This document shows, in pieces, positions 10,685 through 57,430 of a stretch of DNA of 64,000 nucleotides. The notes under the pieces were generated by a model. It did not search any database, was not told the origin of the DNA, and worked only from the letters and a program-made list of their open reading frames with translations. The DNA is taken from positions 62,001 through 126,000 of the IMG/VR virus record IMGVR_UViG_3300042934_000547; one strand, 5' to 3'. Numbering within the stretch: the first letter of the stretch is position 1; every line of letters starts with the position of its first letter. Made by a program: the position numbers and the translations under genes.

Positions 10685-11273
10685 CAAAAAATAAAGCACT
10701 GACGATTAAGCCAGTGCCCGGCTTCCAAATTATTTATATAATCCCGAGTATATCTTATAATTTGGATTCCTCTCCTAATGGTAACTCTCTACTCATTAGG
10801 ATAGTTTGTTACACACTGATTTCTCCCACTAAACCAGTGTCTATTAACCTGCTAAGTATAACAATTTATCATACACGTAAAAAGTATAATATTTACTATT
10901 TCGTTATATATGATATCTGATACACCAATGTATACCTAATCGATAATGTGACATTGATATACCAACTATTTATAAAGTTATATCATCTTTCTCCTAAAGT
11001 GATAGATAACTCTGTTCCGGTTTTGTTATACTCATGCAGTCTTATCTCATGTAAGTAAACCATGAAACAAAATTTTCCCCGAATCACAATTTCTAAATGC
11101 GTACCCCATACACATTCAGTAAATTCCCTAGCTTAATTTCACGTCGATTAGATATATTTCTTACGCTTCGACATTTAATTAAACCGTACACGTCCTCCCT
11201 TTTATGTATTTACTTTAGTTTCCCACACTAAAGTATCAGAATGACGATCAATATTACATTTATATCATCATTC
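10685..11273 (-). ncRNA. Putative ~590-nt highly structured non-coding RNA with G-rich (GGGA/GGAG) hairpin loops
   Basis: Bounded by an early promoter (11271-11296) and a terminator (10696-10717); no convincing long ORF on the transcribed strand; at least 12 hairpins, the first starting at the predicted +1. Confidence 0.65.
10696..10717 (-). terminator. Intrinsic terminator ending the putative ncRNA
   Basis: GCACTGGC-TTAATC-GTCAGTGC followed by TTTATTTTTT on the minus strand. Confidence 0.8.
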
Positions 11274-11296
11274 AAATCTATAATATATATTTGAAA
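11271..11296 (-). promoter_or_regulatory. Early-type phage promoter (26-bp element)
   Basis: Minus strand TTTCAAATATATATTATA-GATT-TGAA; one of 12 copies. Confidence 0.75.
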
Positions 11297-46861: not shown

Positions 46862-48421
46862 TTATGCACTTACATACTGCACTAATTTAACTATAGCATT
46901 GTGATTATATTGCCAATCACGGTCACCTTTTCGTTCTCTGAAGTTGAGTTCTACTATATCATTAATCAACTTATTAGAATCGGAACACGCTTTGTATATC
47001 TTTCGCAACACAACAAACAATTTGTTATTCTTGTTATCGATAATATTATCAAGTGCATTTCCGGTATAGAATTTAACATCACGTAACCTTAGTATACACT
47101 CACTTTCTTCTGGTGTTAATGTAACATAACCAAATATTTCTTTAACTTGTGAACGTAACAATTGGTGTTGTGATTTACCATTTGTAACAACCACTGGTTC
47201 AGGTTCTTTTGTTTCTTTCTCTTGAGTTGGCTGTTCTGTTTTTGGATCACTGGTTAATGTTTTTATATACAACTTCATTTCTCTTTCGAGATTGCCAACT
47301 ATAATGCTGTAAAGCTGTTTGAACTCATCATTGCTGATTGAAGTTTTCAACTCCTTTACCTCAACAAAGAATGCCTGAATAGTTTCTATTGTCTCATCAT
47401 CAGACATGTCAGAGTCGTATACATTACTCAAGAATGCTTTTACTATTGGAATAAGTGTAGTCACCAATTCAAAAACATTTTCAAATTCCGAATGATTATA
47501 GATTACACCCTCTTTAATCTTACCGTTAGCATATCCTTGTATTTGATTAAGGATAGTTTTATAAGTTCCGGAGAATTTATTCTTTGACATGCTGTTTGAA
47601 AGTTTAGTGAATGTTGATCTGATATAATCAATCAATTCATTTTGAACCATCTGTGTATCATCTAAGTCAATCTGTGAAATCTGTTCTATTGCAGATTTTA
47701 TAGGATTTAGAATTTCTTCGGTTTCCACTTCCGTTAAAGCAAGCGACTCGATATACTTAATTATCATCGGTAACCCTTTGTTTATAAAATCACTGTATTG
47801 AGCTCTAAATGAATTTTGATCACCTTCTGGAATCAGTAATGCTCGTTTACCATTCTCAATGACTTCTACATCATCTTCTGATAATACTTCCACATCGTCA
47901 GATGACTCAGACTCTTCTGTTTTGTAATCCGACATGCTATTGAAGACTCTTGTGACATCTTCTTTAATTAACACCTCTGGTAATTTACTACTATATTTGT
48001 CTTTCATAACGCCAATCAGTTCATTAAGAGATGACGTGAATTCGTTTTCATCTCTCAAAATTTCTAATGCGTCATCATTGTTTGCATATGACGATACAGC
48101 CTTCTCGATATCTTTACCCATTAACCATCGAGCTGAATCAATCTTTGCATCTGTTGTTAAATAATGTCCCTTAACACAGAATTCAAATAAGAACATGTCA
48201 ACACTACGTCCAGTGCGTTTTATAATATCAATACACTGTAACAATACTACGTATTGTTTTTGTCCATATTGGTCAATCCAATTTACATCATCACCAGTAA
48301 ATCCTCTTCTAGTCAAGAATTCTTTAATCTGAACAACACTTTCCTTTGTAAATTTCAGATTCTTTTCCAGCATTATACCTAATCCTCTAATACTTCTATA
48401 ACCTTTTTTATTTTCGCTCAT
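46862..48421 (-). CDS. Hypothetical acidic, mostly helical protein, 519 aa
   Basis: Monocistronic: early promoter, structured leader, RBS AGGAGG, terminator; no motif recognised. Confidence 0.75.
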   Translation of the reverse strand: MSENKKGYRSIRGLGIMLEKNLKFTKESVVQIKEFLTRRGFTGDDVNWIDQYGQKQYVVLLQCIDIIKRTGRSVDMFLFEFCVKGHYLTTDAKIDSARWLMGKDIEKAVSSYANNDDALEILRDENEFTSSLNELIGVMKDKYSSKLPEVLIKEDVTRVFNSMSDYKTEESESSDDVEVLSEDDVEVIENGKRALLIPEGDQNSFRAQYSDFINKGLPMIIKYIESLALTEVETEEILNPIKSAIEQISQIDLDDTQMVQNELIDYIRSTFTKLSNSMSKNKFSGTYKTILNQIQGYANGKIKEGVIYNHSEFENVFELVTTLIPIVKAFLSNVYDSDMSDDETIETIQAFFVEVKELKTSISNDEFKQLYSIIVGNLEREMKLYIKTLTSDPKTEQPTQEKETKEPEPVVVTNGKSQHQLLRSQVKEIFGYVTLTPEESECILRLRDVKFYTGNALDNIIDNKNNKLFVVLRKIYKACSDSNKLINDIVELNFRERKGDRDWQYNHNAIVKLVQYVSA

Positions 48422-48440
48422 TTTTTCCTCCTATGAGAAT

Positions 48441-48499
48441 CCTGCTTCTTATACGAAGAATAGCTATGCAGGTTGATGCATCCAACTAAGGATGCATCA
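48441..48499 (-). promoter_or_regulatory. Structured 5' leader (two hairpins)
   Basis: TGATGCATCC-TTAGTT-GGATGCATCA (48474-48499) and CCTGC...GCAGG enclosing TTCTT/AAGAA (48441-48472), just before the RBS. Confidence 0.5.
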
Positions 48500-48522
48500 T
48501 AGATTTTTTATATTTTTTGCTA

Positions 48523-48548
48523 TTCATAATTATAATATATACTTGAAA
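48523..48548 (-). promoter_or_regulatory. Early-type phage promoter
   Basis: TTTCAAGTATATATTATA-ATTA-TGAA. Confidence 0.75.
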
Positions 48549-51633: not shown

Positions 51634-53829
51634 TTATTTGTCTTTTACTAATCTAATTTCATAATTATTATGTCTAGCAATTGGGTTTTGTGGTGTCCTA
51701 TTTATAGGAGAAAAATTGAATTCTCTATAAACAGGTGTTCCTATTCCATAATATCCATTAGGTCGAGTTATACTTCGTCTATGTATCGGACAAGGTAATG
51801 TACGTTTTAGTTTCTTTTCAAATATTAGTTTTAATCCCATACTCTTAAAGAATACATTAAGAATTTCAATAACACGACTTCTAGCATCATCTGGAACATC
51901 AATGGATATATTATATGGGTCACCATTTAATAATGCCGAACATGCTCGTCTTGCTATTGGAGCTGTAGAATACGTCATCAAATTCAGAGCTGTTAATACT
52001 GAACCTAGGTGTTCGTATTCAGCACTCTCCATCTCACCGAATTGTATTGGTGTGCTGGCATATGGTAGTTTGTGACCTTTCTTATTAATTTTAGCGGCAG
52101 CTGGTAATCCTTTAATGTTGGTTGTGGATAATGTTGTAGAACTAAATTTATGCTCAGCGATTTGCTTTAACCTGTATATATACATATATCCCGGATAAAA
52201 CTTTCTCAATGATTGCACATATCTAATTTTCCCATCTGAACCCTCAATAGGCACCATTAAATAATCACCCAAATCTCTCGGACTCATCCCAAGTTCTCTA
52301 ATAAGAGCCGCAAAAAGATCTAATGTCATAATATTTGTTGGATTAGATACTTTATATAAGCCAACATCGATAAGTGAATCTAAGAATGATTTCTTAATTT
52401 GATTCGATGATTTATACAATTTCTTCTTAATAAACATCGCATAATCTTCATCCACATATCTCATATAAATATAAATCTTTTTCAATGTTTCCTCAATATT
52501 ACCATTAATCTTGTAATCTTTGATAATTATATCAGATACATTATTAAGTTCGGTTTCAAATAATTGACCCGGATTCTTTCTACCAACAACGCCGCCTAGG
52601 TCTAATACCATATCAACTGGGCGTCCTTTATACATTGGCATCTTTTCTTTTGGATATATCTCAGATACAATTCCTTTACCACCGAATCTATTGGTTAGCT
52701 TATCTCCAACGCTTAATATAGATTTATCTATTACAGTAAATTTAAGAACAGTATTAGAAAATGGTTTTCCATTGTTTAGCCATTCTTTTCCATCCATAAC
52801 GTCCTTATGAATCTTATAAAACCTCTTTAAATCTGTACTACAATCATTATGTGGATCTTCAATAAGGGGTTTTAAATAACCAACAACCTTTCTTGAATAT
52901 TCCATACTATCTAGATAGTACTGATATAATTGAGAATAATATTGATTCTCAGCAAGTAATGTTGGGTTATTACAGTATATAGATACATCTATAACTATAC
53001 CTTTGGTATAATAAGTTGTATCCGATGGCAGCATTTGTGATAATCTGGAATAAGCATGAGTATATAAAATCTCATCCTTGTTTTCTCTTCTAGTTACCAT
53101 AATAATGCCTTCTACTTCCTCACCAATATTCGGGAATGCTTTATACTCAGTATCATTTCCAAATAAATTAAGTGGAATGTCATTATCGTTAAGGGTAACA
53201 TCGAACATATCAAACACTGGTGAAGCTAATTTAGTTTCAGCTATATCTTGATTTATAAGTATAGCATCTTCTGATGTTTCTAATGGTGACATAAATGCAA
53301 CCAATAAGTTAGTTCCATCTAGTCTGTTATTGAAGTTATCGTAATTTGTGCTTTTCTTGATTACGGTTTCTTTTGGAATAGTTTGACCTATCTTTAATGA
53401 ATCGAGATAGTCATTATTCCATAAAAATCCATACGTCTCAGTATTATATTGACAACTATCTCTAGTTATAATATCATACATTTTATTTTCTTCATTATAT
53501 ACAACGAGTACATAATCAACATACTTACTCGCTGAAACATGATCATATTTCATGATTTTATGAAGAATTCTGAGACTGGTCGGAGTCTTTATAAATGAGG
53601 ATGTATATTCACCTCCCATAATATCAAACCCCGTAGATAACATTGCTATTTCAGGTTCCATTAGACTGATTTTTTGATCAAATTGTGCATCAAACATCAT
53701 CTTTCTATTAGCTGAATTAACAAAGGTAAATGGCTGATTTAACTCACTTGAGAGTATCTCAGCCATATTTTTTATTGATTTCGAAGTCTGGTTAATTTCG
53801 TTAATAATCCCTAAATTGTCTGTTGACAT
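51634..53829 (-). CDS. rpoB: Phage RNA polymerase beta C-terminal subunit (non-virion RNAP), 731 aa
   Basis: NSANRKMM, GTNLLVAFM...SEDAILI, VGDKLTNRFGGKGIVS, PVDMVLD.GGVVGRKNPGQLFE, GYMYIYRLKQ, IQFGEME. Confidence 0.92.
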   Translation of the reverse strand: MSTDNLGIINEINQTSKSIKNMAEILSSELNQPFTFVNSANRKMMFDAQFDQKISLMEPEIAMLSTGFDIMGGEYTSSFIKTPTSLRILHKIMKYDHVSASKYVDYVLVVYNEENKMYDIITRDSCQYNTETYGFLWNNDYLDSLKIGQTIPKETVIKKSTNYDNFNNRLDGTNLLVAFMSPLETSEDAILINQDIAETKLASPVFDMFDVTLNDNDIPLNLFGNDTEYKAFPNIGEEVEGIIMVTRRENKDEILYTHAYSRLSQMLPSDTTYYTKGIVIDVSIYCNNPTLLAENQYYSQLYQYYLDSMEYSRKVVGYLKPLIEDPHNDCSTDLKRFYKIHKDVMDGKEWLNNGKPFSNTVLKFTVIDKSILSVGDKLTNRFGGKGIVSEIYPKEKMPMYKGRPVDMVLDLGGVVGRKNPGQLFETELNNVSDIIIKDYKINGNIEETLKKIYIYMRYVDEDYAMFIKKKLYKSSNQIKKSFLDSLIDVGLYKVSNPTNIMTLDLFAALIRELGMSPRDLGDYLMVPIEGSDGKIRYVQSLRKFYPGYMYIYRLKQIAEHKFSSTTLSTTNIKGLPAAAKINKKGHKLPYASTPIQFGEMESAEYEHLGSVLTALNLMTYSTAPIARRACSALLNGDPYNISIDVPDDARSRVIEILNVFFKSMGLKLIFEKKLKRTLPCPIHRRSITRPNGYYGIGTPVYREFNFSPINRTPQNPIARHNNYEIRLVKDK

Positions 53830-53853
53830 CTTGTTATCTCCTTTGTTTTATCT

Positions 53854-53879
53854 TTCACTAATATAATATATATTTATTT
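53854..53879 (-). promoter_or_regulatory. Early-type phage promoter (overlaps the recA stop)
   Basis: AAATAAATATATATTATA-TTAG-TGAA. Confidence 0.6.
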
Positions 53880-55110
53880 ATCCTATTAAGCTTAGTAAAG
53901 ACATTGTGTCGCTAACTGGTGGTGAAGCTATTTCTAAACTTTCATTCTCTTTTATGTATGGTCTCAATATAGTTAAAGCTTCCTCAATAGCAATCCTTTG
54001 TAATACAGGATCAGTTCGGAATTTATTCTTAAAGTCTTTTTGGGAAAATGTGACTTCTTTACGGTCTCCTATATAGAAACTCCTACCACCACCATTAAGA
54101 ACCTTATTCTTTTTAAATAAGGTAAGTAATGACATCTCATAATCAAATCCAATTTCTTGATTAAATAGCAATGGAACCGATTTACCTGATTTATTAGTCC
54201 TCGTTTTGACAATCTCAAAGTCGGCTACGTTACCATCTATATCATAGTTGCCTTCACCTTTCGATTCTCCTTCAACCAATTTACCACCGTCATTAATCCT
54301 GAACATATTTGATGCTGAATAATTAGCAGTTCTACCACCCGGTAATGTCTCACCCGGTTTTAAATAAGGTAATGAGGCTTTTTTAGGAGTTGCTGATATA
54401 TCCTCAAGTATATGATTAATTAGTATTAGTATTATATTAGCTTTCTTACATACCGGAATCACTCTCTTAAATATACCTGTATTAGTTTTAGCCGCTGATG
54501 TAGCTGCATAACCACCTGTTAAATCATCTTCGCTTGCGAAATTCTCAGGTAACAAATAGGCTAGACTATCAAGTATATAAACTGTAGGTACATACTTAAT
54601 TATAGGATTACCCATTCTATCAAAATGACCAGTATCATATTGAAATTTATCTGGATTGGATATTTTTAAATTTGCTATAGTTTTTAAACGAGTAAAAAAG
54701 TTTTCTGCTGTTATACCTTCATTTCGTCCTCGATAACAACTGTCAAATGTATCCATATCAAATTTAAGTAATTCAATCTTTCTCTCAGTAAGCATACCGA
54801 CTTCAACTAAATCCTCTAATATTAATCCACCTTTATCTATAAATGGTCTAATAATATTGCCAGCAATCTGTGTTGCTAGAGTTGATTTACCGCATCCACT
54901 TCGACCTATAATAATATTAGTAGAGCCATCTGCTATACCTAAAATATTATAATTGTACAATTCTCCATTTGGTTTAAGACCAGTAGCTTGTCTTCCATTT
55001 CTGAAGTCAATTGCTAAAAATCCTGTGGGATATCCAATATCACTACTAAGATATAATGGATCTCCTATCTTCTTCAATTCCTTCTTATATGATTCACTTA
55101 AATCATGCAT
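53878..55110 (-). CDS. recA: RecA/UvsX-like recombinase, 410 aa
   Basis: PTGFLAIDF, Walker A GRSGCGKST, Walker B YILDSLA, ILINHI, PGGRTANYSAS, IVKTR. Confidence 0.85.
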   Translation of the reverse strand: MHDLSESYKKELKKIGDPLYLSSDIGYPTGFLAIDFRNGRQATGLKPNGELYNYNILGIADGSTNIIIGRSGCGKSTLATQIAGNIIRPFIDKGGLILEDLVEVGMLTERKIELLKFDMDTFDSCYRGRNEGITAENFFTRLKTIANLKISNPDKFQYDTGHFDRMGNPIIKYVPTVYILDSLAYLLPENFASEDDLTGGYAATSAAKTNTGIFKRVIPVCKKANIILILINHILEDISATPKKASLPYLKPGETLPGGRTANYSASNMFRINDGGKLVEGESKGEGNYDIDGNVADFEIVKTRTNKSGKSVPLLFNQEIGFDYEMSLLTLFKKNKVLNGGGRSFYIGDRKEVTFSQKDFKNKFRTDPVLQRIAIEEALTILRPYIKENESLEIASPPVSDTMSLLSLIG

Positions 55111-55137
55111 AATAACACCCTCCTGATAATCTTATCT

Positions 55138-55149
55138 CACTATAATGTT
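55138..55149 (-). promoter_or_regulatory. Late-type promoter for recA
   Basis: Minus strand AACATTATAGTG (AACA-N6-TG). Confidence 0.55.
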
Positions 55150-55164
55150 CCGCTATACATAAAA

Positions 55165-55300
55165 AAGAAAAAAAAAGAAGTCGAAGGGGGACTTACGGCT
55201 TCTTTTTTATAAATATAATTTATGGGGTAAATTAGAAGTAAGGGGTGGAATTAGTCAATCATCCTGTATGATGATTGATTTATATTACCACTTCTAATTC
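55165..55300 (-). ncRNA. Putative ~135-nt small RNA with a CAGGAUG apical hairpin and C-rich segments
   Basis: Early promoter at 55298-55323; 5' end pairs as AATTAGAAGT/ACTTCTAATT; inner stem TCAATCATC/GATGATTGA; terminator hairpin with a UCCCC loop and long U tract; no ORF. Confidence 0.7.
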
Positions 55301-55323
55301 ATATTTATAATATATATTTGAAA
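55298..55323 (-). promoter_or_regulatory. Early-type phage promoter
   Basis: TTTCAAATATATATTATA-AATA-TGAA. Confidence 0.75.
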
Positions 55324-55344: not shown

Positions 55345-55368
55345 AGAAAGAGAAATTAATCTCTTTCT
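55345..55368 (-). terminator. Intrinsic terminator after the tubulin operon
   Basis: AGAAAGAGA-TTAATT-TCTCTTTCT followed by TTTT. Confidence 0.8.
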
Positions 55369-55369
55369 A

Positions 55370-56308
55370 TTAAAATAACTGTACTCCATAGTCATAAAAT
55401 ACTTTCACCTTTATATTTATAAGTCTATCGAATCCACTTGGTGCAACTGACAGTGTTTGTTGCATTCTATTATCAATTAGATACTTATAATAACTCACAA
55501 AGATTTTTTCAATTTGCTGTGTGGTTAAATTAAATGTCATCATCTCAAGTATCATCATATAAATCTCTTTATCTAAAACAGCACCCATAGTCATCATACC
55601 AATAAATACTGGTTTAAAGGTATTGAATATAATTGATACTATATCTTTGCAATACTGTTTGAGATTATTGACTTTTATATAATTTAATATAGCTTGTGCT
55701 AAAGCAATGTCAGAATAGCTCCTTTGTAATTTTATCAGTCCTATAGCATCATCTTCTGATATCCCTAGCCAAGTGAAATTAGCTATATCCGATTTAGTGA
55801 TAGTTTCTGACATAATATCCGAAGCTATGTTATTGAACTTGAATTGAGCCGAATTGATTAATTCACTTATCTTTGTCTGGATGCTAAATTCGAAGTTAGG
55901 AAAGTTAAATCTGATATATTCAGCGATATCTTTATCATTGATGATATTATAAGCCATATCAGAATTCAATGCTTTCTCATAACAGTTATTGAACATTTGA
56001 ATCTTTTCATCTCCTGTCATTACATCCATATTATTGATTAAATAATTTAACGCTTCATTCGGTCTCAATGCATATGATAAATCTAAATTATTAATAGGCT
56101 GAGGTATAATTTTATTACATACCTCAGATATATATGCTTCGCTTTTATCATCCAACATCTTAAACTTTGAATATTGATGTGGAGTTTGTCCATTTCCATA
56201 TCTTTTTACTTTTGGTGAAAAAGCTCCATGTGGATCGAATGGAGCTAAAATCTTTCTTACTTGGTCTTTTGATGCTCTTCTTGGTTTTGTCCCTTTTTGT
56301 TGTCCCAT
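55370..56308 (-). CDS. Hypothetical protein co-transcribed with the tubulin, 312 aa
   Basis: RBS AAGGAG 12 nt after the tubulin stop; basic N-terminus, helical C-terminal region. Confidence 0.7.
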   Translation of the reverse strand: MGQQKGTKPRRASKDQVRKILAPFDPHGAFSPKVKRYGNGQTPHQYSKFKMLDDKSEAYISEVCNKIIPQPINNLDLSYALRPNEALNYLINNMDVMTGDEKIQMFNNCYEKALNSDMAYNIINDKDIAEYIRFNFPNFEFSIQTKISELINSAQFKFNNIASDIMSETITKSDIANFTWLGISEDDAIGLIKLQRSYSDIALAQAILNYIKVNNLKQYCKDIVSIIFNTFKPVFIGMMTMGAVLDKEIYMMILEMMTFNLTTQQIEKIFVSYYKYLIDNRMQQTLSVAPSGFDRLINIKVKVFYDYGVQLF

Positions 56309-56320
56309 TGGTACTTCTCC

Positions 56321-57430
56321 TTATTTTAAATTAGCGAAAAAGTCACCGTCTGTGTCTTTGCCTTTCTCACTATTGTGCATACCTCCCATATCAAATGAAT
56401 CATCATCTGTTTCAAGCATATTTATTTCGCTAAAGAATGTATCCTTTGCTTTATTTATTTTTTCCATCTTGGCAAGATACTCTTCATGGGTATCCTTAAT
56501 ACTCTTAAATGGTAACTTCATTCCGGAAAACATCATACAAACATAGTCGCAGTCTCCAACATTCTGAACATGACTAAATACTTCATATGGTTCTCCTATT
56601 TTTTGTCTAACAACGGTATTCTTGTAGTCTATACAATCTTTAATCTTTTCAGATGTAAGATTATATATGATACTTAATCTTGGTATATCAAAGTTGTCAG
56701 ACGGTATTGATTTGCTGCTGTCAATCATATCAGCAATAGCATCGTCAAAATCATTTCTATTGTTGATACTTTTTAATATCTTCTTTTCTATATTTTGATA
56801 GCCCGGTGTATTAACTGATTTATACAAGTCAAATTCATCAATATTTGTATCACCGCTGATGATACCAATACCTAAAATGATTGCAACTCTATTCACAATA
56901 TTTAAGTTACAGTCTTCCTCGGCTTTAAGTATATTATTACTTCTATCCAAGAATTTCTCGTTACATATTATCTGAATAGTATAGTTATCCTGCAAATGTT
57001 TGAAGAATTCTACATAGTTCTTTTGACCTCTTGGATCTAATCCAAATCCTTTAACAGCAATGATTGTTACATTAACATTCATCTGGTCTCTAAAGAATTT
57101 AGCTATTACCGGTGTTGCTCCTGAACCTGTACCACCTTCAGTTGATGTCAATAAAATGACTCCATCATACGTACCTGTGTTGTATACCTCACGTAAATCT
57201 AATGTTTTTTGTTTCATTGCATCTATAACTATATTTCTTGCTCTCGATGGTTCTTTACCTGCACCACCTATACCTGAACCTATTTTGATAGATAAATCTT
57301 CAAATCCAGCCGGAATATCTTCCATAGTTGTATTAATTAACGCAAAATCAGTTCTATCTAAATCCAAATCATTTAGAACCCTTATTGCCATTTTGTTTCC
57401 TGCTGCACCTATCCCAATTATTTTCTTCAT
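56321..57430 (-). CDS. phuZ: Tubulin/FtsZ-family GTPase (PhuZ/TubZ-like), 369 aa
   Basis: IIGIGAAGNK, LINTT, GGAGKEP, signature STEGGTGSG, T7-like loop NIDEFD, acidic C-terminal tail. Confidence 0.85.
   Translation of the reverse strand: MKKIIGIGAAGNKMAIRVLNDLDLDRTDFALINTTMEDIPAGFEDLSIKIGSGIGGAGKEPSRARNIVIDAMKQKTLDLREVYNTGTYDGVILLTSTEGGTGSGATPVIAKFFRDQMNVNVTIIAVKGFGLDPRGQKNYVEFFKHLQDNYTIQIICNEKFLDRSNNILKAEEDCNLNIVNRVAIILGIGIISGDTNIDEFDLYKSVNTPGYQNIEKKILKSINNRNDFDDAIADMIDSSKSIPSDNFDIPRLSIIYNLTSEKIKDCIDYKNTVVRQKIGEPYEVFSHVQNVGDCDYVCMMFSGMKLPFKSIKDTHEEYLAKMEKINKAKDTFFSEINMLETDDDSFDMGGMHNSEKGKDTDGDFFANLK

What the first reader, a model, noticed from the sequence alone, without database searches (positions are those of the whole stretch)
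55165..55323. ~135-nt early sRNA with a CsrB-type CAGGAUG hairpin and anti-Shine-Dalgarno C-rich segments
Seen: a promoter-terminator unit between the tubulin operon terminator and the recA promoter, with no ORF. The 5' end forms a long hairpin (AAUUAGAAGU/ACUUCUAAUU outer stem, UCAAUCAUC/GAUGAUUGA inner stem) capped by AUACAG, giving AUACAGGAUG. The 3' arm has UUCCACCCCUU and the terminator loop is UCCCC. Known: CAGGAUG is the CsrB repeat consensus and close to the CsrA SELEX motif; UCCC loops in S. aureus RNAIII and RsaE seed pairing to RBSs. Inference: a trans-acting phage sRNA that silences host mRNAs or binds CsrA. Its UUCCAC could also pair with the GUGGGA loops of the 590-nt RNA, suggesting an sRNA/sponge pair (speculative).
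Basis: partly seen in the sequence, partly recalled or inferred. Interest (0 to 1): 0.65.

Follow-up and report, generated by a model that had tools for sequence, protein, structure and literature searches.

The report
ORF-less early RNA unit, jumbo phage
An uncultivated AR9-like giant phage carries a short gene-less unit (early phage promoter, very stable 5' hairpin, terminator) that should make a ~132-nt non-coding RNA early in infection; the unit looks real, but its proposed CsrA-sponge role is not supported and its target is unknown.

Summary
On the minus strand, window 55320-55169 carries a perfect AR9-type virion-RNA-polymerase early promoter (AAATATATATTAT-N6-G, start at G 55300). A 72-nt hairpin follows, flush with the 5' end, then a 20-nt single-stranded linker and a terminator with a U9-C-U6 tract. 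There is no ORF. The downstream UvsX-like gene has its own AR9-type late promoter (AACA-N6-TG, start at 55138), so the unit stands alone.

The hairpin is not special to this RNA. About 20 of this phage's 32 early transcripts begin with a hairpin flush with +1, which suggests a 5' stabiliser. Relatives at 66% and 30% UvsX identity have only ORF-terminator-late promoter-uvsX. The upstream terminator, early promoter and hairpin are therefore a young, lineage-specific insertion in front of the ancestral terminator.

Published AR9 data show the same layout before g214, and there the early transcript stops before the gene.

The CsrB reading fails: one GGA, two of its three bases in a 9-bp stem, and no Rfam match. 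Three C4-5 runs are present, two of them in unpaired stretches, but their clustering is only weakly unusual. Predicted pairing to phage ribosome-binding sites is at chance level. No homologue and no RNA reads were found. This is a candidate early sRNA of unknown target.

The parts
55370..56308 (-). 312-aa ORF, last gene of the tubulin operon (function unknown)
   Evidence: ORF list. No Pfam or PHROG hit. Only itself in the word search. 39% identical to the ORF upstream of uvsX in relative L036.
55345..55368 (-). T1, intrinsic terminator of the tubulin operon
   Evidence: Called by the scan: 9-bp stem, loop of the GAUUAAUUUC type common in this genome, -11.1 kcal/mol.
55301..55320 (-). Early (virion-RNAP type) promoter AAATATATATTAT + 6 nt; +1 = G at 55300
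   Evidence: Exact match to the AR9 early consensus (PMC5312081). One of 32 copies in the genome. 92-97% identical over 32-37 nt to the promoters at genome 126050 and 101163.
55169..55300 (-). Predicted ~132-nt non-coding early RNA
   Evidence: TSS inferred from the consensus; 3' end inferred from the U tract. No ORF. Fold z = -5.9. No Rfam family.
55229..55300 (-). 5' hairpin flush with +1 (outer stem, internal loops, inner stem), -22.9 kcal/mol
   Evidence: The most stable of the 5'-flush hairpins that follow about 20 of 32 early start sites.
55255..55278 (-). Inner 9-bp hairpin UCAAUCAUC-AUACAG-GAUGAUUGA (holds the only GGA)
   Evidence: G37 is in the loop; G38 and A39 are in the stem.
55242..55248 (-). 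C-rich motif 1, CCACCCC (ACC paired, flanks in internal loops)
55209..55228 (-). Single-stranded A/U-rich linker holding C-rich motif 2 (ACCCCA, 55228-55223)
   Evidence: Unpaired in the MFE and centroid structures. UACCCCAUA (55229-55221, its first U being the last base of the 5' hairpin) is a 9-nt complement of UAUGGGGUA in the 590-nt early RNA.
55171..55208 (-). T2, terminator with loop UCCCCC (C-rich motif 3, 55190-55186) and a U9-C-U6 tract to 55161
   Evidence: -10.3 kcal/mol with the A/U extension; no alternative antiterminator fold. Positional and partial sequence counterpart of the single operon terminator in relatives L036 and G006. Not called by the strict scan.
55138..55149 (-). 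Late (non-virion RNAP type) promoter AACATTATAGTG of the UvsX-like gene; +1 = G at 55138
   Evidence: AR9 late consensus AACA-N6-T(A/G). The motif is about 8-fold enriched 20-29 nt (about 4-fold at 30-39 nt) before start codons. Kept at the same distance in G005, G006 and L036. AR9 g086 has a mapped late TSS of the same form.
53878..55110 (-). UvsX/RecA-like recombinase gene
   Evidence: PHROG 97, E = 9.5e-30. 33% identical to AR9/PBS1 UvsX-like proteins.

Best explanation
The unit is a genuine, self-contained early transcription unit of an AR9/PBS1-like jumbo phage.

How it works:
- The injected virion RNA polymerase starts at G 55300 from a perfect early promoter.
- The RNA folds at once into a 72-nt hairpin that leaves no single-stranded 5' end. 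This phage gives most of its early transcripts such a hairpin, which most likely shields them from 5'-end-dependent decay (RNase J1/RppH type).
- Transcription stops at T2. T2 is the old operon terminator, which also insulates the late-promoter-driven uvsX-like gene.
- The product is a ~132-nt non-coding RNA made only early in infection.

Its free parts are a 20-nt A/U-rich linker with ACCCCA and the UCCCCC terminator loop. If it acts in trans, pairing of these C runs with G-rich (Shine-Dalgarno-like or G-rich-loop) sequences is the most likely mode.

Shown: promoter class, fold, absence of an ORF, the separate late promoter, recent insertion. Inferred: transcript ends, stabiliser role, any trans action.
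For: - Promoter: exact AR9 early consensus with mapped +1 rule, and 32 copies co-oriented with genes.
- Genome layout: terminator followed by early promoter is the standard junction between operons in this genome.
- Fold: z = -5.9.
- 5'-flush hairpins: -6.6 kcal/mol on average against -3.1 for shuffled leaders, Wilcoxon p = 7e-5. The stems differ in sequence between copies but all pair the conserved GAAU start. The same tendency is seen in relative G001 (p = 0.04).
- Decay rationale: RNase J1 needs 4-5 unpaired 5' nucleotides (PMC5419742).
- Independence from uvsX: the gene has its own late promoter.
- No antiterminator alternative to T2. The uvsX SD is not sequestered in a read-through RNA.
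- Origin: relatives L036 (66% UvsX identity) and G006 have ORF-T-Plate-uvsX without the unit.
- AR9 precedent: early TSS 181724, a 94-nt flush hairpin, a terminator, then late TSS 182012. g214 reads are 0.69/20.7/1427 at 5/20/40 min, so the early RNA ends before the gene.
- A second ORF-less early unit with the same layout lies at window 11273-10691.
- Close relatives in two other studies' runs keep the unit: 4 substitutions and 3 inserted letters over window 55112-55272.
Against: - No RNA evidence. The two runs labelled RNA-Seq hold no contig on the unit, and contigs could not show transcript ends anyway.
- T2 is an imperfect hairpin that the strict scan missed, so read-through may be substantial.
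- No homologue in five related genomes by covariance model, in IMG/VR, phage or plasmid collections, or in metagenome scans. There is therefore no covariation support for this RNA itself.
- The conservation in runs X2/X3 lies in a block that is 96-98% identical anyway.
- The C-run cluster is only weakly unusual: it is the only one on that strand, but about 0.12 are expected.
- Target predictions on phage RBSs are at chance.
- 5'-flush hairpins are not enriched in AR9.
Confidence: 0.5

Rival explanations
1. Leader/attenuator of the uvsX-like gene. The early promoter plus the late promoter form the tandem that AR9 uses for 'continuously expressed' replication and recombination genes. T2 only damps early expression, and the short RNA is a by-product of premature termination.
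For: - AR9 uses early+late tandems for continuous expression of DNA-metabolism genes.
- T2 is a weak, bulged hairpin missed by the strict scan.
- No other terminator follows for about 3.5 kb.
- 5'UTR-derived sRNAs from premature termination are described in phage 201phi2-1 (PMC11512511).
Against: - The promoter sits upstream, not downstream, of the ancestral terminator.
- There is no antiterminator alternative.
- In the AR9 analogue the gene behind the terminator is silent early.
- AR9 uvsX itself is low at 5 min (10.8, against 497 and 920 later).
- Relatives express uvsX from the late promoter alone.
Confidence: 0.2
2. Neutral remnant. A terminator plus early-promoter plus leader cassette was copied in, or an early gene behind it was lost. 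It leaves an orphan promoter whose short transcript has no function.
For: - The unit is lineage-specific and absent at the syntenic site in L036, G006, G001, L037 and G005.
- The promoter is 92-97% identical to other copies in the genome.
- No homologue was found.
- Target predictions are at chance.
Against: - The hairpin is the most stable of all 32 leaders, and it has no paralogue.
- There is no trace of an RBS or a decayed ORF in the 20-nt linker.
- A second ORF-less early unit and the AR9 case show the layout recurs.
- Close relatives keep it intact.
Confidence: 0.25
3. CsrA/Rsm sponge. The CAGGAUG hairpin titrates the host CsrA.
For: There is a 7-mer match to the CsrB repeat and a partial match to the SELEX motif (sequence).
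Against: - Single GGA, two-thirds of it in a 9-bp stem.
- One base missing relative to the consensus.
- The motif occurs 18 times in the genome.
- No Rfam match.
- CsrA dimers prefer two sites, and sponges carry many.
Confidence: 0.03

Closest known systems
Bacillus phage AR9 early unit upstream of g214 (early TSS 181724, listed as a 340-nt 5'UTR in PMC5312081, Table S2)
   Same: Same promoter consensus, and a hairpin flush with +1 (94 nt). A terminator and T-rich tract come before an AACA-N6-TA late promoter of the next gene. The gene is silent at 5 min, so the early RNA ends before it.
   Different: There is no sequence similarity. The AR9 unit is about 260 nt, holds a possible 15-codon ORF with an RBS, and precedes a virion protein gene rather than uvsX. 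It has not been described as a separate RNA.
RsaE/RoxS (Rfam RF01820), C-rich sRNAs of Firmicutes
   Same: A short terminator-ended RNA with several C4 runs, some in single-stranded regions and loops. Those runs in RoxS pair with G-rich mRNA sites (PMC5419742).
   Different: No Rfam match even at E up to 10, and a different fold. It is phage-encoded and made from a virion-RNAP promoter. No target is supported.
CsrB/RsmY-type protein sponges
   Same: One CAGGAUG heptamer at a hairpin tip.
   Different: One site instead of many, GGA partly paired, a long stable stem, and no model match.
sRNAs of giant phages 201phi2-1 and phiKZ found by ONT-cappable-seq (PMC11512511)
   Same: Short units in which a terminator follows a start site closely, either intergenic or 5'UTR-derived.
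   Different: Those are Pseudomonas phages with other promoter motifs. There is no sequence relation, and those RNAs were seen experimentally whereas this one is only predicted.
5'-terminal stem-loop stabilisers of Bacillus mRNAs (aprE leader and similar; recalled from my own knowledge, not checked here)
   Same: A hairpin within a few nucleotides of the 5' end blocks 5'-end-dependent decay. The RNase J1 channel takes 4-5 unpaired nucleotides.
   Different: The role here is inferred only from position and from recurrence in about 20 of 32 early transcripts. The host and its RNases are unknown.

Membership tests
AR9-type early (virion RNAP) transcription unit | Promoter AAATATATATTAT-(6N)-G+1 | tested here: met
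   Exact match at 55320-55300, and 32 copies in the genome.
AR9-type early (virion RNAP) transcription unit | Phage of the AR9/PBS1 kind with split multisubunit RNAPs and AACA-N6-T(A/G) late promoters | tested here: met
   RNAP beta-like gene. The best isolates matching UvsX are AR9/PBS1, Staphylococcus and Listeria jumbo phages. The late motif is enriched before genes.
AR9-type early (virion RNAP) transcription unit | Transcript present early and independent of protein synthesis | not testable with these tools
   No RNA run covers the unit.
Stand-alone bacterial/phage sRNA (promoter, no ORF, intrinsic terminator) | No translatable ORF between start and terminator | tested here: met
Stand-alone bacterial/phage sRNA (promoter, no ORF, intrinsic terminator) | Efficient terminator giving a discrete 3' end | tested here: inconclusive
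   The hairpin is -10.3 kcal/mol with U9-C-U6, but it is imperfect and was missed by the strict scan.
Stand-alone bacterial/phage sRNA (promoter, no ORF, intrinsic terminator) | Conservation or covariation of structure in relatives | tested here: not met
   Absent at the syntenic site in five relatives. The covariance model found none. Only near-identical copies were seen.
CsrB/RsmY sponge | Multiple GGA motifs in loops of short hairpins | tested here: not met
   One GGA, partly in a 9-bp stem.
CsrB/RsmY sponge | Match to an Rfam Csr/Rsm model | tested here: not met
RsaE/RoxS | Match to RF01820 | tested here: not met
   No hit at E up to 10.
RsaE/RoxS | Unpaired C-rich regions | tested here: met
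   ACCCCA lies in the linker and UCCCCC in the terminator loop. The cluster is unique on that strand, though about 0.12 are expected by chance.
RsaE/RoxS | Pairing of C-rich regions with SD regions of targets | tested here: inconclusive
   Phage RBS set: no excess over shuffles. The host is unknown, so host targets were not tested.
Transcription attenuator / riboswitch leader | Antiterminator structure competing with the terminator | tested here: not met
   With the T2 3' arm blocked, its 5' arm stays unpaired. No Rfam cis-regulatory match.

The most novel reading that the evidence does not exclude
AR9-like jumbo phages run a small program of ORF-less RNAs made by the injected virion polymerase. 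In this phage the C-rich 132-nt RNA and the G-rich-loop 590-nt RNA (window 11273-10691) would be partners, or an sRNA/sponge pair. The pairing would use the linker UACCCCAUA against UAUGGGGUA, and the loop GUCCCC against GGGGAC-type loops. Alternatively they would act on G-rich Shine-Dalgarno sites of host mRNAs, or of late phage mRNAs such as the tail-tube-like gene at genome 192207, to time expression early in infection.
Probability: 0.12. Interest if true: 0.7.

Novelty: new member of a known kind. Interest (0 to 1): 0.4.

Why it matters
Regulatory RNAs of giant phages have only begun to be catalogued, and so far only in Pseudomonas phages. This case, the second ORF-less early unit in the same genome, and the overlooked AR9 example together suggest something broader. 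Phages of the AR9/PBS1 kind may make non-coding RNAs with their injected polymerase, before any phage protein exists. The near-universal hairpin flush with the 5' end of this phage's longer early leaders is a testable idea for how early phage RNAs survive host 5'-end-dependent decay. For the single RNA in question the value is moderate: it is a well-defined candidate with exact predicted ends, ready for a Northern blot or deletion, but it has no conserved relatives and no supported target.

Tried and rejected
- **Rfam.** The whole window at gathering score gave nothing. The 400-nt region at E up to 10 gave only noise, with no CsrB, RsmY or RsaE.
- **Nucleotide searches.** Phage and plasmid collections gave no match.
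- **Protein-seeded searches.** IMG/VR with the UvsX-like protein gave no close relative. The word search with the 312-aa ORF found only itself.
- **Metagenome scans.** The inner hairpin 24-mer gave none. The T2 20-mer gave five hits in 56-58% GC contigs, unrelated chance matches.
- **CRISPR-repeat mimic (RNA anti-CRISPR) idea.** A genome-collection scan for a 19-mer of the hairpin gave two single, non-repeated hits. Rejected.
- **Covariance model.** A model of the RNA searched against G000, G001, G003, G005 and G006 found only a terminator-like match in G001.
- **Cis anti-SD idea.** In a read-through RNA the C runs do not pair with the uvsX SD.
- **Antiterminator.** None found.
- **Replication-origin / R-loop idea.** There is no skew turn near the site.
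- **Expression.** The two wastewater 'RNA-Seq' runs hold the phage only as scattered contigs, none on the unit, and one is probably DNA. The substitution table was cut before this region.
- **General 5'-hairpin rule in AR9.** Not supported.
- **Operator rules.** The stretch laid was 4,001 letters.

Full report
**What the window is**

The window is bases 62001-126000 of a 231,975-bp IMG/VR virus record with terminal repeats and 30.8% G+C. Around the finding all genes lie on the minus strand:
- a tubulin-family gene (56321-57430);
- a 312-aa ORF of unknown function (55370-56308);
- a UvsX/RecA-like gene (53878-55110);
- an RNA polymerase beta-like gene (51634-53829).

The UvsX-like protein is about 33% identical to those of Bacillus phages AR9/PBS1 and of Staphylococcus and Listeria jumbo phages. 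The order uvsX, early promoter, RNAP beta is shared with AR9. The phage is therefore an uncultivated member of the AR9/PBS1-like group, which carries two multisubunit RNA polymerases.

**The observation**

- the outer stem AAUUAGAAGU/ACUUCUAAUU;
- the inner stem UCAAUCAUC/GAUGAUUGA with loop AUACAG;
- UUCCACCCCUU in the 3' arm;
- a terminator with loop UCCCC(C).

The 156-nt stretch folds to -36.8 kcal/mol, against -17.8 +/- 3.2 for shuffles (z = -5.9). No ORF of 25 codons or more exists on that strand between 55110 and 55370.

**The promoter and the transcript ends**

The sequence CAAATATATATTATAAATATG matches the experimentally derived AR9 early consensus AAATATATATTAT-(6N)-G+1 exactly. That consensus is recognised by the injected virion polymerase (PMC5312081). 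The genome holds 32 such motifs, nearly all co-oriented with genes and typically placed just after a terminator.

This puts +1 at G 55300. The U9-C-U6 tract after T2 puts the 3' end near 55169, giving about 132 nt.

**The neighbouring gene has its own promoter**

AACATTATAGTG (55149-55138) fits the AR9 late consensus AACA-(6N)-T(A/G). In this genome that motif is found 29 and 15 times in the bins 20-29 and 30-39 nt upstream of start codons, against 3.5 expected per bin.

The same motif sits at the same distance before the uvsX-like genes of relatives G005, G006 and L036. AR9 g086 (UvsX-like) has a mapped late start of the form AACAAGTAATTG.

**The hairpin is a class feature**

Downstream of the 32 early start sites, about 20 transcripts begin with a hairpin whose first pair involves +1 to +3.
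- The best flush hairpin averages -6.6 kcal/mol, against -3.1 for leaders whose downstream part was shuffled (Wilcoxon p = 7e-5).
- The stems differ in sequence from copy to copy, yet each complements the conserved GAAU... start.
- The finding's hairpin is the most stable (-22.9 kcal/mol).
- Three other leaders have the same nested outer-stem/inner-hairpin design.
- Relative G001 shows the same tendency (p = 0.04). AR9 does not.

RNase J1 needs 4-5 unpaired 5' nucleotides (PMC5419742). A flush hairpin is therefore a plausible 5' stabiliser if the host is a Firmicute. This is inference.

**Origin**

The closest relative with flanking DNA is L036 (UvsX 66% identical; its upstream ORF is 39% identical to the 312-aa ORF up to the last residue). 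It has the ORF stop, one terminator (AAAGAAG...CTTCTTT, T8-A-T6), the late promoter, then uvsX, with no early promoter and no hairpin. G006 has the same order, with T8-C-T5. G001 and L037 have a terminator followed by a small lipoprotein-like ORF and uvsX.

T2 is therefore the counterpart of the ancestral operon terminator (alignment). T1 plus the early promoter plus the hairpin and linker form a lineage-specific insertion in front of it.

Two public runs from other studies hold a close relative with the unit in place. They show 4 substitutions and 3 inserted letters over 55112-55272 (two extra bases in the U tract and one extra base in the 5' arm of T2). uvsX itself is only about 85% identical, and the flanks are 96-98%. 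That conservation is not informative about selection.

**Precedent and recurrence**

In AR9, Table S2 lists an early start at 181724 as a 340-nt 5'UTR of g214, and Table S3 lists a late start at 182012. The sequence between them begins with a 94-nt hairpin flush with +1 and ends in a hairpin plus T-rich tract just before AACAAATAATTA. g214 reads are 0.69, 20.7 and 1427 at 5, 20 and 40 min, so early transcription does not reach the gene.

In the present genome a second early promoter (start at window 11273) is followed by about 590 nt without an ORF, a strong terminator, a late promoter and then a gene. The layout 'early promoter, structured RNA, terminator, late promoter, gene' therefore recurs.

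**Tests of the proposed functions**

*CsrA sponge.*
- The RNA has one GGA (1.7 expected per 132 nt).
- Its second G and its A are paired in a 9-bp stem.
- The sequence lacks one base of RUACARGGAUGU.
- CsrA sites favour GGA in 6-nt loops of hairpins of 4 bp or fewer (PMC7652899).
- CAGGATG occurs 18 times in the genome.
- Rfam finds nothing.

This reading is rejected.

*Anti-SD action.* Three C4-5 runs lie within 70 nt, two of them unpaired. It is the only such cluster on that strand, but about 0.12 would be expected by chance, and the other strand has four.
- Duplex energies to 238 phage RBS windows do not differ from shuffles (mean -13.7 against -14.0).
- One outlier is the RBS of a tail-tube-like late gene at genome 192207: -31.4, against shuffle minima of -25.0 +/- 1.9.
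- The best contiguous Watson-Crick match is at chance (p = 0.65).

*Pairing with the 590-nt RNA.* The whole-RNA duplex gives p = 0.075. The suggested UUCCAC:GUGGGA pairing needs a wobble and a paired CCA. The linker UACCCCAUA is a perfect complement of UAUGGGGUA at a hairpin tip of the 590-nt RNA, which puts that RNA in the top 1-10% of genome windows depending on word length. This is a lead, not a finding.

*Attenuator.* No alternative fold competes with T2, and the uvsX SD stays free in a read-through RNA.

*Other ideas.* A CRISPR-repeat mimic and a replication origin found no support.

**Verdict**

The unit is real as anatomy and very probably transcribed early as a short RNA. It belongs to a known kind (promoter-terminator sRNA candidates of giant phages; PMC11512511) but to no known family.

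My estimates:
- about 0.5 that it is a discrete early non-coding RNA as described;
- about 0.2 that it mainly serves as a damped early leader of uvsX;
- about 0.25 that it is a neutral orphan;
- about 0.03 for a CsrA sponge.

Noticed in passing
window 10691-11289 (-): A second ORF-less early unit. An early promoter (start at 11273) is followed by a flush 5' hairpin and about 590 nt of highly structured RNA with G-rich loops (GUGGGAA, UGGGG, AGUGGGAGA). Then come a strong terminator, the late promoter AACATTTTAATA and a 230-aa gene.
   Followed up: partly
window 11289, 39163, 48541, 51137, 62010 (-) and others in the genome: Half (16 of 32) of the early promoters carry an extra TGTAAAA box 22 nt upstream of TATATATTATA. 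These are the ones with long leaders and 5'-flush hairpins. The finding's promoter lacks the box.
   Followed up: partly
window 48421-48525 (-); genome 160957 (-) and 180758 (+): Three paralogous early leaders share an outer stem GAAUAGY/RCUAUUC and an inner hairpin with a UUAGUU/UUGGUU loop. In two of them (genome 160957, 180758) a CUCAC...GUGAG pairing crosses the outer stem next to the SD. This could be a switch.
   Followed up: no
window, many intergenic sites (e.g. 55345-55368, 11319, 39191, 58995): About 15 of roughly 50 intergenic terminators share a loop containing UUAAU (several the fuller GAUUAAUUUC form), also seen in relatives G001 and L037. T2 of the finding does not have it.
   Followed up: no
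L071:240-570 (genome 175040-175370, + strand): A very C-rich low-complexity stretch (CCCCCC, CCCCCC, CCC, CCCC) is followed by a T/C-rich tract and then a G+C-rich, apparently structured 130-nt stretch in a 310-nt gap. There was no Rfam or tRNA hit.
   Followed up: partly
L072:425-766 (AR9 181724-182065): The AR9 early start listed as a 340-nt 5'UTR of late gene g214 looks like a separate early RNA. It has a 94-nt flush hairpin, a possible 15-codon ORF with an RBS, and a terminator before the late start.
   Followed up: partly
G001 178976 and 179806 (+): In relative G001 two early start sites are followed at once by a terminator-like hairpin flush with +1 and a U tract, 60 nt before the next gene.
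   Followed up: no
window 53821-55110: In the close relatives of runs X2/X3 the uvsX-like gene is only about 85% identical while both flanks are 96-98%. A 160-nt segment (53907-54068) is replaced by 166 other letters. This looks like mosaic exchange of the recombinase gene.
   Followed up: no
genome 171273 (-) and 196958 (+): Two paralogous small early genes have near-identical leaders. Each has the hairpin GRAUAAGA/UCUUAUYC and a GACCUC...GAGGC pairing.
   Followed up: no
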